Below are positions 25,289 to 27,450 of a DNA stretch of 64,000 bases, piece after piece. The stretch's first letter is position 1. Every line of letters starts with the position of its first letter. This DNA is from Camelus dromedarius (taxonomy: Eukaryota). The notes under the pieces were generated by a model. That model was not told where the DNA came from, did not search any database, and saw nothing but the letters and a program-made list of their open reading frames with translations. Position numbers and translations under genes: made by a program. The stretch lies in the NCBI RefSeq assembly GCF_036321535.1, contig NC_087458.1, positions 7,812,001-7,876,000 on the forward strand. The letters are read 5' to 3'.

Positions 25289-25724
25289 CACTATGTCTTC
25301 CCTCAACACTGAGGATACCCTCCAAGAGCCCTCACCCTCAAGTTCTGAGAAGAAAAAGAAACCAGGGACAACCCCATTCTCCGAGCCTGTGCCTTCAATC
25401 TGGAGGCTGCTTATGTGGAGACCGGGGACCCAGCCAGAGGCCTTGAGCTGCTCCTACGGGCCCAACCTCAAAAGAAGGCCCAGGGCAGGTGTCATGGTGA
25501 CCAGCGTTTCAATCTGGCTTTGGCCTACCAAGCCCAAGGCAACCTGCCTCAAGCTTTGGCCTGGTACCACAAGGCCCTGGGCCACTAACAGCCCATGCAA
25601 AAATGGGAGCCTGTTACCAGGCCCTGGGACAGCCTGAGCTAGCAGCCCACTGCCTGCAGAGTGGTGCAGGTGCTGGAAGAGAGCCGGAGGCTTGCTGAGA
25701 GGAGCACTGAGCCGGGACTGCTAG
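25289..25724 (+). pseudogene. TTC24: TTC24 first coding exon remnant
   Basis: Acceptor at 25287-25288, ATG 25293, donor GTGAG 25725. TTC24 homology switches frame three times and contains a TAA. Confidence 0.85.
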
Positions 25725-25910
25725 GTGAGGAGGCCTTTGGGCACAAAGGTGTGGGATCTGGGGAGATTCAGACCCGGTGATACTCTGAGGAGTGGAGTGG
25801 AAGCATTTCTGAGGGCTGGGGGGACCCTGGGAGAGCAGGGAAGAGACTGCACTAGTACAGCTTCAGCTGCCTCTGACCTGGCTACCAGTGACCTTGGCCA
25901 TGCCCTCTAG

Positions 25911-26114
25911 GGCGACTCTATAATGACCTAGGCCTGGGCTACTCCCAGCTCCAGCTGTTCCCGCTAGCAGCAGAGGCCTTCCTGCAGGCCCTGCCCCTGT
26001 GCCGGGGGCCAGGAGAGGAGGCCACGGTGCTAAGAAACCTTGGGATGGCCCACAATGCCCTTGGCAACTATCAGAAAGCCCAGGAGTTTCACCAGAAGGC
26101 TGCTGACCTGCATG
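25911..26114 (+). pseudogene. TTC24: TTC24 exon (TPR), open
   Basis: [31 protein letters not shown]...FHQKAADLH; AG/GT intact. Confidence 0.9.
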
Positions 26115-26656
26115 GTGGGTACCAGGGTCTGGGGAACGGGATTGGGACCAAAGGACTAAAAGGGGGTTCCAGCTGGGGCCCCAAGGCTGAAGAGTAGATG
26201 GACACTTAAAGGTGAGGACTAGGGGAACAGATGAGATAACCAGACAGGACAGAGGGATGGGCCCAGAGGCTGTGGCCTGGGAAGGCAGCAATGGGCAGAG
26301 GGAAAAGCCCTGGCTGGGAGAGGAAGCTTGAAGAGCAGCCCAGTGTGTAGTGACTGATGTTCAGCAAATCACTTTTGCTTTTGAGCTTGTTTCCACACGT
26401 ATAAAAAAAACGGAGCTATTAATACCTGCCTTGCCTGCGTTTTTGCCTGCCTCAAACTAGCCAAGGGGGAGGCATTCAGGCCAAAACCTAGGGCAAAGAG
26501 GCTGTTTTGAGAGCTCAGGCCTCTGTGGGTGCATCTGGAGGTGTGCTGGGGTTGAGCACCAGGACTCCTGGCAACTCTCCCTTAATTGTTGGGCGTAGGG
26601 TCCTGATGCCCCAGCAGCTGAGGTCCTCTCAGGAGGGTGTGTGCTCTTGTCACCAG

Positions 26657-26785
26657 GTGCTGTGGGGCAGCGGTGGGAGCAGGGCCGGAGCTTTGGCAGC
26701 CTGGCATTTGCACTGAGCCAGCTGGGGGACCACAAGGCCGCCAGGGACAACTACCTGCATGCTCTGCAGGCTGTACGGGACACTG
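26657..26785 (+). pseudogene. TTC24: TTC24 exon (TPR), open
   Basis: [43 protein letters not shown]. Confidence 0.9.
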
Positions 26786-26906
26786 GTGAGGGTGAGGGGG
26801 CTGGCAGGTGGCTTAGGGTGGGGAAAGGCTGTGGGGAGGACCTCTGAAGGGGAGGGTCAGTCAGGGTAGAGAGCCATGGGAGGACCTCTCAGGCTCTCTT
26901 CCCCAG

Positions 26907-27019
26907 GGGACATGAAGGGGCAGTGGCAGGCCTGTGAAGGTCTGAGGGCTGCTGCAGCCAGATTGGGGCAGCATGACCAGGCCTTGAAGTACTATGAGGA
27001 AGCACTGGCCCAGTGTCAG
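26907..27019 (+). pseudogene. TTC24: TTC24 exon (TPR), open
   Basis: [38 protein letters not shown]. Confidence 0.9.
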
Positions 27020-27351
27020 GTGAGACCCTCCATCCCAGAATCTACCACTTCCCTGCTATCCCCTCCAGCTGCTATCCCTTCTCTGGCTGACATGCCTGCC
27101 TTTCCCCCACCATTTATTCACTCATCAAACAAGCAACAGGCACATTGGGTGCTAGGTCCTGGGACTATTGCGATACAGTCTATCTACAATTCCGGGCAGG
27201 CAGCAGCAAGACCCTGGCAAAGGCACCCTGATGGTGTAGAAAAGAAGGGAGACAAAGCCCCCCCTTCCCTCCCCCTTTCCTGTTTCTTTCTTCCCCAATC
27301 CCCAGAGGATTGCAAAGCCCAGGCCTTCCCCATTACCCACCCTCTTCCCAG

Positions 27352-27450
27352 AAGGAGCCAGATTCTGTATGAGAGCGGCTGGTGGCCAAGCTGGCAGACG
27401 CCATGAGAACCCACTTGGCCCAGGGTGGGCTGGTCCCAACTCACACTCTG
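27352..27450 (+). pseudogene. TTC24: TTC24 exon with nonsense codon
   Basis: [32 protein letters not shown] (TGA 27370-27372). Confidence 0.88.

What the first reader, a model, noticed from the sequence alone, without database searches (positions are those of the whole stretch)
25293..27450. TTC24 appears to be a lineage-specific unitary pseudogene
Seen in sequence: TTC24-like peptide blocks in the first coding exon lie in three different frames (switches near 25361, 25596 and 25660). An in-frame TAA replaces a Tyr codon (..ALGH*QP, 25586-25588), and a TGA (probably CpG-decay CGA>TGA) interrupts a later exon (KEPDSV*ER, 27370-27372). From my recall of human TTC24, about 45, 8 and 36 codons are missing at the three junctions (roughly 270 nt), removing whole TPR helices. 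Translation from ATG 25293 gives 114 mostly out-of-frame residues and stops at 25637, 87 nt before the next junction, which predicts NMD. Inference: true gene loss at the syntenic locus. Five independent lesions with no Ns nearby argue against a sequencing artefact.
Basis: partly seen in the sequence, partly recalled or inferred. Interest (0 to 1): 0.75.

Follow-up and report, generated by a model that had tools for sequence, protein, structure and literature searches.

The report
Dead TTC24 gene in camels
In the dromedary, TTC24, a little-studied gene kept from sharks to humans, is broken in at least seven places at its normal chromosomal position; at least one break is shared with the wild Bactrian camel, while the alpaca copy is intact, so this is an ordinary but apparently unreported gene loss of Old World camels.

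Summary
Against the intact alpaca gene, the first coding exon (25293-25724) has three frameshifting deletions of 136, 22 and 107 nt. A Tyr codon is now TAA (25586-25588) and a CGA is now TGA (27370-27372). Intron 6 has collapsed to 37 nt, and the exon-7 donor is AT instead of GT.

Porpoise, musk deer, rhino and alpaca keep every one of these sites, so the lesions arose in the camel lineage. The locus is syntenic (IQGAP3 / TTC24 / NAXE / GPATCH4).

The window is Camelus dromedarius. All sampled words of the stretch occur in about 20 DNA-like runs from nine studies, five of them not flagged as a possible source. The C. ferus assembly shares the 136-nt deletion with identical breakpoints.

The gene therefore died after the split from llamas and alpacas and before the dromedary/two-humped split. 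The loss is specific to Camelus, not to all camelids.

The ORF from the ATG is 114 codons and stops 87 nt before the first junction, so NMD is predicted but untested.

It is a new member of a well-known kind, of modest interest.

The parts
25293..25724 (+). Remnant of TTC24 coding exon 1: 432 nt here against 697 nt in alpaca. The ATG is kept and the GT donor follows 25724.
25358..25359 (+). Junction of the 136-nt frameshifting deletion. It removes alpaca residues 23-67, that is most of helix 17-45 and all of helix 49-64. C. ferus shares it with identical breakpoints.
25586..25588 (+). TAA in place of TAC (Tyr144, invariant in 24 orthologues). It directly abuts the 22-nt deletion.
25589..25590 (+). 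Junction of the 22-nt frameshifting deletion (alpaca residues 145-152).
25635..25637 (+). First stop (TAG) of the reading frame opened at ATG 25293. It comes after 114 codons and lies 87 nt upstream of the exon 1-2 junction.
25659..25660 (+). Junction of the 107-nt frameshifting deletion. It removes alpaca residues 176-211, that is the end of helix 167-183, all of helix 187-204 and the start of helix 209-224.
25911..26114 (+). Exon 2. It is intact, identical to alpaca within the exon, with AG/GT splice sites kept.
26657..26785 (+). Exon 3. It is intact apart from one Ala-to-Val change.
26907..27019 (+). Exon 4. The frame is open. Gly-to-Arg and Arg-to-Gln changes arose on the camel branch.
27352..27450 (+). 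Exon 5, carrying the nonsense codon TGA at 27370-27372 (CGA in alpaca and outgroups; Arg388, in the last helix of the TPR domain).
28190..28284 (+). Exon 6. It encodes the start of the disordered C-terminal tail and its frame is open.
28285..28321 (+). Collapsed intron 6: 37 nt here against 145-160 nt in alpaca, porpoise, musk deer and rhino. The 108-nt deletion removes the polypyrimidine tract.
28322..28421 (+). Exon 7 (28322-28419) followed by a destroyed donor. It reads AT at 28420-28421, where alpaca and three outgroups have GTGAGT.
29050..29146 (+). Exon 8. The frame is open and the splice sites are kept.
29564..29645 (+). Exon 9, with the ancestral stop codon at 29643-29645.

Best explanation
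This is the orthologous TTC24 locus of the dromedary, and it is a unitary pseudogene.

Shown:
- Three frameshifting deletions in exon 1 remove two whole helices and parts of four others from an LGN/Pins-like TPR superhelix, and leave a net +1 shift.
- Two ancestral codons have become stops.
- Further downstream, one intron has collapsed to 37 nt and one splice donor is lost.
- The 136-nt deletion is shared with Camelus ferus.
- Alpaca, porpoise, musk deer and rhino are intact at every lesion site.

Inferred:
- The gene was inactivated on the Camelus stem, after the Camelini/Lamini split (11-25 Mya) and before the dromedary/two-humped split (5-8 Mya; dates from PMC4884201).
- It has drifted neutrally since then.
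- Any transcript from the old start codon ends after 114 codons, 87 nt before the first of eight exon junctions, and should be removed by nonsense-mediated decay.
- No full TPR protein can be made.
For: Anatomy of the lesions.

Synteny and an intact alpaca gene with canonical splice sites.

Polarity: porpoise L004, musk deer L005 and rhino L006 keep all the deleted segments, the CGA, the TAC, the long intron 6 and the GT donor.

Not an assembly slip:
- All sampled 31-letter words of 25200-27500 (231 words) or 25200-29700 (457 words) are held by about 20 DNA-like runs from nine studies, P1-P7, P15 and P16.
- Five of those studies are not flagged as a possible source.
- An intact allele alone would lose roughly 15 of these words.
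- The dromedary assembly GCA_000803125.3 is identical across the gene.
- The C. ferus assembly GCA_009834535.1 has the same 136-nt junction, with no Ns.

No rescue copy is visible. The only Camelus TTC24 proteins among 5.8 billion are two gene models from this locus that thread around the lesions.

Relaxed constraint: in the TPR exons the camel branch has 9 non-synonymous against 4 synonymous changes. That gives omega 0.74 against a background of 0.20-0.25 (binomial P = 0.033 under 0.22; a good fit under omega = 1).

Structural damage: mapped on the AlphaFold model of alpaca TTC24, in which helices 17-405 are mostly at pLDDT above 90. The fold is closest to the LGN/Pins TPR domain.
Against: - The DNA support therefore rests on word presence in contigs, which cannot exclude a rare intact allele.
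- Expression, splicing and NMD are untested. RNA-labelled runs hold 43-66% of the words, more than the exons alone (about 30%). That is compatible with unspliced RNA or with DNA carry-over.
- Only the 136-nt deletion is demonstrably shared with C. ferus. The other lesion sites fall inside larger C. ferus deletions.
- The omega test rests on 13 substitutions.
- The camel genome itself was not searched for a second copy.
- Exons 2-4 are still nearly identical to alpaca, although neutral divergence here is only about 3%.
Confidence: 0.9

Rival explanations
1. The locus still yields a shortened functional product. This could be an N-truncated protein from an alternative start or alternative splicing (as in the 417-aa C. 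ferus gene model), one of the residual ORFs, or a functional non-coding RNA.
For: - Databases carry protein models for this locus: a 274-aa partial model for dromedary and a 417-aa model for C. ferus.
- Residual ORFs of 110 aa (26045-27372, about 2.5 TPRs) and 139 aa (disordered tail) exist in the spliced model.
- RNA-labelled runs hold much of the locus.
- Exons 2-4 differ little from alpaca.
Against: - Both models read intron 4 as coding sequence and skip the damaged parts, and the C. ferus model adds a non-homologous N-terminus. This is typical of automated models built on pseudogenes.
- C. ferus has lost exon 5 and exon 7 altogether, so no common truncated protein is conserved between the two camels.
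- The TPR superhelix loses its first repeat and its middle helices.
- Omega on the camel branch fits neutrality.
- The similarity of exons 2-4 is expected when neutral divergence is only about 3%.
Confidence: 0.05
2. The lesions form a null allele that is common but not fixed, so some camels still carry a working TTC24.
For: Contigs drop rare variants, so word presence does not exclude a second allele (tool note). No reads were laid.
Against: Every one of about 20 DNA-like runs from nine studies holds all the words of the broken allele. The 136-nt deletion is shared by two species whose lineages separated 5-8 Mya (PMC4884201). Seven lesions have accumulated on one haplotype, which needs a long time without selection.
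Confidence: 0.03
3. The deletions and stops are assembly or sequencing errors.
For: The window and L003 may derive from the same assembly lineage, since they are identical across the gene.
Against: Runs from five studies not flagged as the source hold every sampled word across the junctions and stops. An independent C. ferus assembly shares the 136-nt junction. There are no Ns within 5 kb.
Confidence: 0.02

Closest known systems
TTC24 (tetratricopeptide repeat protein 24) of other mammals, for example alpaca (537 aa), pig (576 aa) and horse-family (581 aa)
   Same: Same chromosomal neighbourhood, same exon structure and splice sites for exons 2-6, 8 and 9. Exons 2-3 are 99-100% identical at nucleotide level to alpaca.
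   Different: The camel copy lacks 265 nt of exon 1, carries two nonsense codons, has a collapsed intron and a dead splice donor, and cannot encode the protein.
Other lineage-specific unitary pseudogenes, including those this scan noted in the same dromedary genome (ECI1, TNFRSF6B, TYMP, NCR3, CES3)
   Same: The same kind of event: a single-copy gene decayed in place, with several independent lesions, while relatives keep it (for the scan's notes, which I did not check).
   Different: A different gene. Here the loss is confined to Camelus, with alpaca intact. I found no publication on it.
TPR domain of LGN/GPSM2 and Pins (for example PDB 3sf4, 5a7d, 4a1s)
   Same: This is the closest solved relative of intact TTC24 by sequence (E about 1e-17 to 1e-19) and by fold (Foldseek E about 4e-12, target TM up to 0.79). 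Both are superhelices of paired TPR helices.
   Different: Identity is only 20-25%. TTC24 has a long disordered tail instead of GoLoco motifs. No partner or function is known for TTC24. The likeness describes what was lost, not the camel remnant.

Membership tests
Unitary pseudogene | It sits at the position orthologous to a functional gene in related species. | tested here: met
   Window 16641-39731 aligns colinearly with the alpaca locus that carries IQGAP3 (-), TTC24 (+), a YjeF_N gene (NAXE) and a G-patch gene.
Unitary pseudogene | It carries disabling lesions (frameshift, nonsense, splice) in the coding sequence. | tested here: met
   Three frameshifting deletions, TAA, TGA, a 37-nt intron and a GT-to-AT donor change.
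Unitary pseudogene | The lesions are derived, meaning the ancestral gene was intact and relatives keep it. | tested here: met
   Alpaca, porpoise, musk deer and rhino are intact at all lesion sites. TTC24 proteins are found from shark and coelacanth to mammals.
Unitary pseudogene | The lesions are real in the organism and not an assembly artefact. | tested here: met
   All sampled words are present in about 20 runs from nine studies. The 136-nt deletion is shared with the C. ferus assembly.
Unitary pseudogene | There is no functional duplicate elsewhere in the same genome. | tested here: inconclusive
   No other Camelus TTC24 protein appeared in two searches of 5.8 billion proteins. The Camelus genomes themselves could not be searched with these tools.
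Unitary pseudogene | Selective constraint is relaxed after inactivation. | tested here: inconclusive
   Omega is 0.74 (9 non-synonymous, 4 synonymous) in the TPR exons, against a background of 0.20-0.25 (P = 0.033). The counts are small.
Unitary pseudogene | The transcript is absent, aberrant or degraded by NMD. | not testable with these tools
There is only word sharing in RNA-labelled runs.
TTC24 orthologue | The remaining exons are best matched by TTC24 rather than by other TPR proteins. | tested here: met
   Exon 2 finds TTC24 models at 59-81% identity over its full length. The exons are 96-100% identical at nucleotide level to alpaca TTC24. The database names are tetratricopeptide repeat protein 24.

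The most novel reading that the evidence does not exclude
The loss of TTC24, a gene expressed in human B cells, CD8 T cells and plasmacytoid dendritic cells, was not neutral. On this reading it was part of the unusual remodelling of the immune system in Old World camels. Alternatively, the decayed locus survives as a transcribed regulatory RNA or a short TPR protein. Either way, camels would be a natural knockout that reveals the function of an uncharacterised gene conserved across vertebrates.
Probability: 0.07. Interest if true: 0.5.

Novelty: new member of a known kind. Interest (0 to 1): 0.3.

Why it matters
TTC24 is conserved from cartilaginous fish to mammals. It evolves under moderate constraint (omega about 0.2 in its TPR domain). 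It has no known function beyond appearing in immune-cell expression and eQTL lists.

A clean, datable natural knockout in Camelus, with an intact copy in alpaca, offers a comparative handle on what the gene does. It also adds to the list of camel gene losses.

It has a practical side as well. The public protein records for Camelus TTC24 are models threaded around lesions and should be treated as pseudogene artefacts.

Lineage-specific gene losses number in the hundreds per mammalian lineage, so a specialist would not be surprised.

Tried and rejected
Later look-ups used 27369-27824 and 27155-27439 only. Later family, structure and fold searches used the alpaca protein. Local alignments in scripts still included the exon.
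- Exact-product look-ups of two ORFs whose sequence depends on the C-to-T change at 27370 found nothing on record. Two earlier tries were not sent because the service was busy.
- The phmmer scan with exon 2 was swamped by multi-repeat TPR proteins. It gave only a few TTC24 models, which were enough to seed the rest.
- dN/dS over all exons (omega 0.51 for the camel branch, about 0.3 for the alpaca branch at the same sites) cannot separate the branches. Only the TPR exons give a weak signal.
- My first polarisation script mis-called two 'stops' where alpaca and camel had both changed the same codon. This was corrected with outgroup ancestors.
- Organism B (run X14) holds every word, so it is not a C. 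ferus-like genome. At the 0.5% divergence seen here such a genome would hold about 85% of the words. X14 therefore gives no cross-species evidence.
- Whether the 22-nt and 107-nt deletions, the TAA, the TGA and the intron-6 and exon-7 lesions predate the Camelus species split could not be decided. Each site lies inside or at the edge of a larger C. ferus deletion.
- Paper searches for TTC24 with pseudogene or camel found nothing relevant. Two desert-genomics papers do not mention gene loss. Wu et al. 2014 is not held.

Full report
**What is in the sequence.** Translating 25293-25730 in three frames shows TTC24-like peptide blocks that hop between frames. The N-terminal peptide is in frame 1. 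A long TPR block is in frame 3 and ends in a TAA. A short block is in frame 2. The last block returns to frame 3 and runs into a GT donor. Downstream exons with AG/GT borders follow.

**Identity of the gene and the species.**
- A HMMER scan with exon 2 returned TTC24 models.
- One of them (P0014) matches the window's exons exactly and is recorded as 'Tetratricopeptide repeat protein 24, partial [Camelus dromedarius]'.
- Its locus in assembly GCA_000803125.3 (L003) is 99.96% identical to window 22659-32645 and identical across the gene.
- The window is therefore dromedary. The scan's other notes on this genome say the same.

**The reference.** A search with a full-length feline TTC24 returned 180 proteins at E up to 1e-30, from most mammalian orders. 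One of them is a 537-aa alpaca protein (P0174).
- Its locus L001 carries IQGAP3 upstream on the minus strand, with a YjeF_N gene (NAXE) and a G-patch gene downstream.
- L001 aligns colinearly with window 16641-39731, so the window holds the syntenic locus.
- I rebuilt the nine alpaca exons. They all have canonical splice sites and translate exactly to P0174.

**Lesions, by nucleotide alignment to alpaca.**
- Exon 1 is 432 nt (25293-25724) against 697 nt in alpaca.
- Three segments are missing: 136 nt at 25358/25359, 22 nt at 25589/25590 and 107 nt at 25659/25660.
- Each deletion shifts the frame, and together they leave a net +1 shift.
- TAC (Tyr144) has become TAA at 25586-25588. It lies directly beside the 22-nt deletion, so the two may be one complex event.
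- In exon 5, CGA (Arg388) has become TGA at 27370-27372 by a C-to-T change at a CpG.
- The exon-7 donor reads AT instead of GT at 28420-28421.
- Exons 2, 3, 4, 6, 8 and 9 keep open frames and splice sites.

**Polarity.** Loci for harbour porpoise (L004), musk deer (L005) and black rhino (L006) keep all three exon-1 segments, the TAC and the CGA. They also keep an intron 6 of about 145-160 nt and a GTGAGT donor after exon 7. Every lesion is therefore derived on the camel side.

**Is it real DNA?** There are no Ns within 5 kb.
- The run index found all sampled 31-letter words of 25200-27500 in 14 DNA-like runs, and all words of 25200-29700 in six more.
- Together these come from nine studies, five of which are not flagged as a possible source.
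- With about one word per ten bases, each lesion is covered by roughly three words. A sample carrying only an intact allele would therefore score clearly below 1.00.
I worked beside those places afterwards.
- Contigs cannot exclude a rare second allele.

**Other camels.** The C. ferus assembly (L002, GCA_009834535.1) shares the 136-nt deletion with identical breakpoints.
- It also shares 12 of the 14 camel-branch substitutions that can be compared.
- It has three further deletions relative to the dromedary, of about 252, 382 and 167 nt. They remove the rest of exon 1, exon 5 and exon 7, with no Ns at the junctions.
- I cannot tell whether these are real further decay or assembly faults.
- They swallow the sites of the other dromedary lesions, so only the 136-nt deletion is demonstrably ancestral to Camelus.
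- With alpaca intact, inactivation falls between the Old World/New World camel split (11-25 Mya) and the dromedary/two-humped split (5-8 Mya) (PMC4884201).

**Selection.** Substitutions were polarised with the outgroups.
- The dromedary branch has 7 synonymous and 11 non-synonymous changes, including the two stops.
- In the TPR exons 1-5 the counts are 4 and 9, giving omega 0.74 against a background of 0.20-0.25 between intact species.
- Nine or more non-synonymous changes out of 13 has P = 0.033 under omega 0.22, and fits omega 1 well.
- At the same sites the alpaca branch has 6 and 6 (omega about 0.3).
- Exonic divergence between alpaca and dromedary (2.3%) is close to non-exonic divergence (3.0%).
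- The signal agrees with relaxation but is weak.

**What was lost.** An AlphaFold model of alpaca TTC24, built on 24 orthologues, gives a confident solenoid of 19 helices over residues 17-405 and a disordered tail over 408-537.
- Deletion 1 removes most of helix 17-45 and all of helix 49-64.
- Deletion 2 removes a loop and the start of helix 148-163.
- Deletion 3 removes the end of helix 167-183, all of helix 187-204 and the start of helix 209-224.
- The TGA falls in the last helix.
- By sequence and by fold, the closest solved structures are the TPR domains of LGN/GPSM2 and Pins.
- Pfam finds only generic TPR families.
- The literature gives no function. TTC24 appears in human immune-cell lists: B cells, CD8 T cells, plasmacytoid dendritic cells and a cytotoxic module.

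**Mechanism.**
- Shown: no reading frame joins the start codon to the TPR exons. The longest residual ORFs in a conventionally spliced transcript are 139 aa (disordered tail), 114 aa (mostly out of frame) and 110 aa.
- Inferred: the first stop lies 87 nt before the first of eight junctions, so a spliced transcript should be an NMD target.
- RNA-labelled runs from two studies hold 43-66% of the words of a stretch that is about 30% exon. This suggests unspliced RNA or DNA carry-over and proves neither.

**Rivals.**
- A shortened functional product is unlikely. The two database models read intron 4 as protein and skip the damaged parts, and C. ferus lacks exons 5 and 7.
- A polymorphic null allele is unlikely, given the cross-species deletion and the uniform word counts.
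- Assembly error is close to excluded.

**Novelty.** I found no paper linking TTC24 to gene loss or camels. Genome-wide loss catalogues could not be consulted. This is a new member of a well-known kind: correct, cleanly datable and of modest interest.

Noticed in passing
L002 4614, 5937, 6759 (equivalent to window 25589-25840, 27129-27510, 28304-28470): The C. ferus assembly lacks about 252, 382 and 167 nt that the dromedary keeps, including the rest of exon 1, exon 5 and exon 7. There are no Ns at the junctions. This is either further independent decay of the pseudogene or an assembly fault.
   Followed up: partly
window 27020-27165 (intron 4), read as protein in P0014 and P0270: The public protein records for Camelus TTC24 (a 274-aa partial model for dromedary and a 417-aa model for C. 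ferus) thread around the lesions and translate intron 4. The C. ferus model also has a non-homologous N-terminus. They look like annotation artefacts on a pseudogene.
   Followed up: partly
P0085, P0256, P0259, P0285 (bat Rhynchonycteris naso): Four 'LOW QUALITY PROTEIN: TTC24-like' records lie on four different contigs of one bat genome, and one of them also hits the YjeF_N family of the neighbouring gene. This may be duplication or decay of TTC24 in that bat.
   Followed up: no
window 28862-28939: This is an open stretch homologous to the extra C-terminal exon (the '...RFAKH...' segment) that pig, horse and human TTC24 include and the alpaca model skips. The whole tail (alpaca residues 408-537) is predicted to be disordered and is poorly conserved (omega 0.5-0.9 between intact species).
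   Followed up: partly
window 28471-28538 and 28660-28934: Camel has 68 nt and 275 nt in intron 7 that alpaca lacks (C. ferus has them too). I did not polarise whether these are insertions in Camelus or deletions in alpaca.
   Followed up: no
window 25200-29700: RNA-labelled runs filed as 'reproductive system metagenome' and as organism C hold 43-66% of the locus's words, well above the exon share of about 30%. Introns are therefore represented, through unspliced transcripts or DNA carry-over.
   Followed up: no
window 18933-19811, 48069-48665, 56532-56679: There are six runs of N (969 letters in all). The first three lie in the stretch that aligns to alpaca IQGAP3.
   Followed up: no
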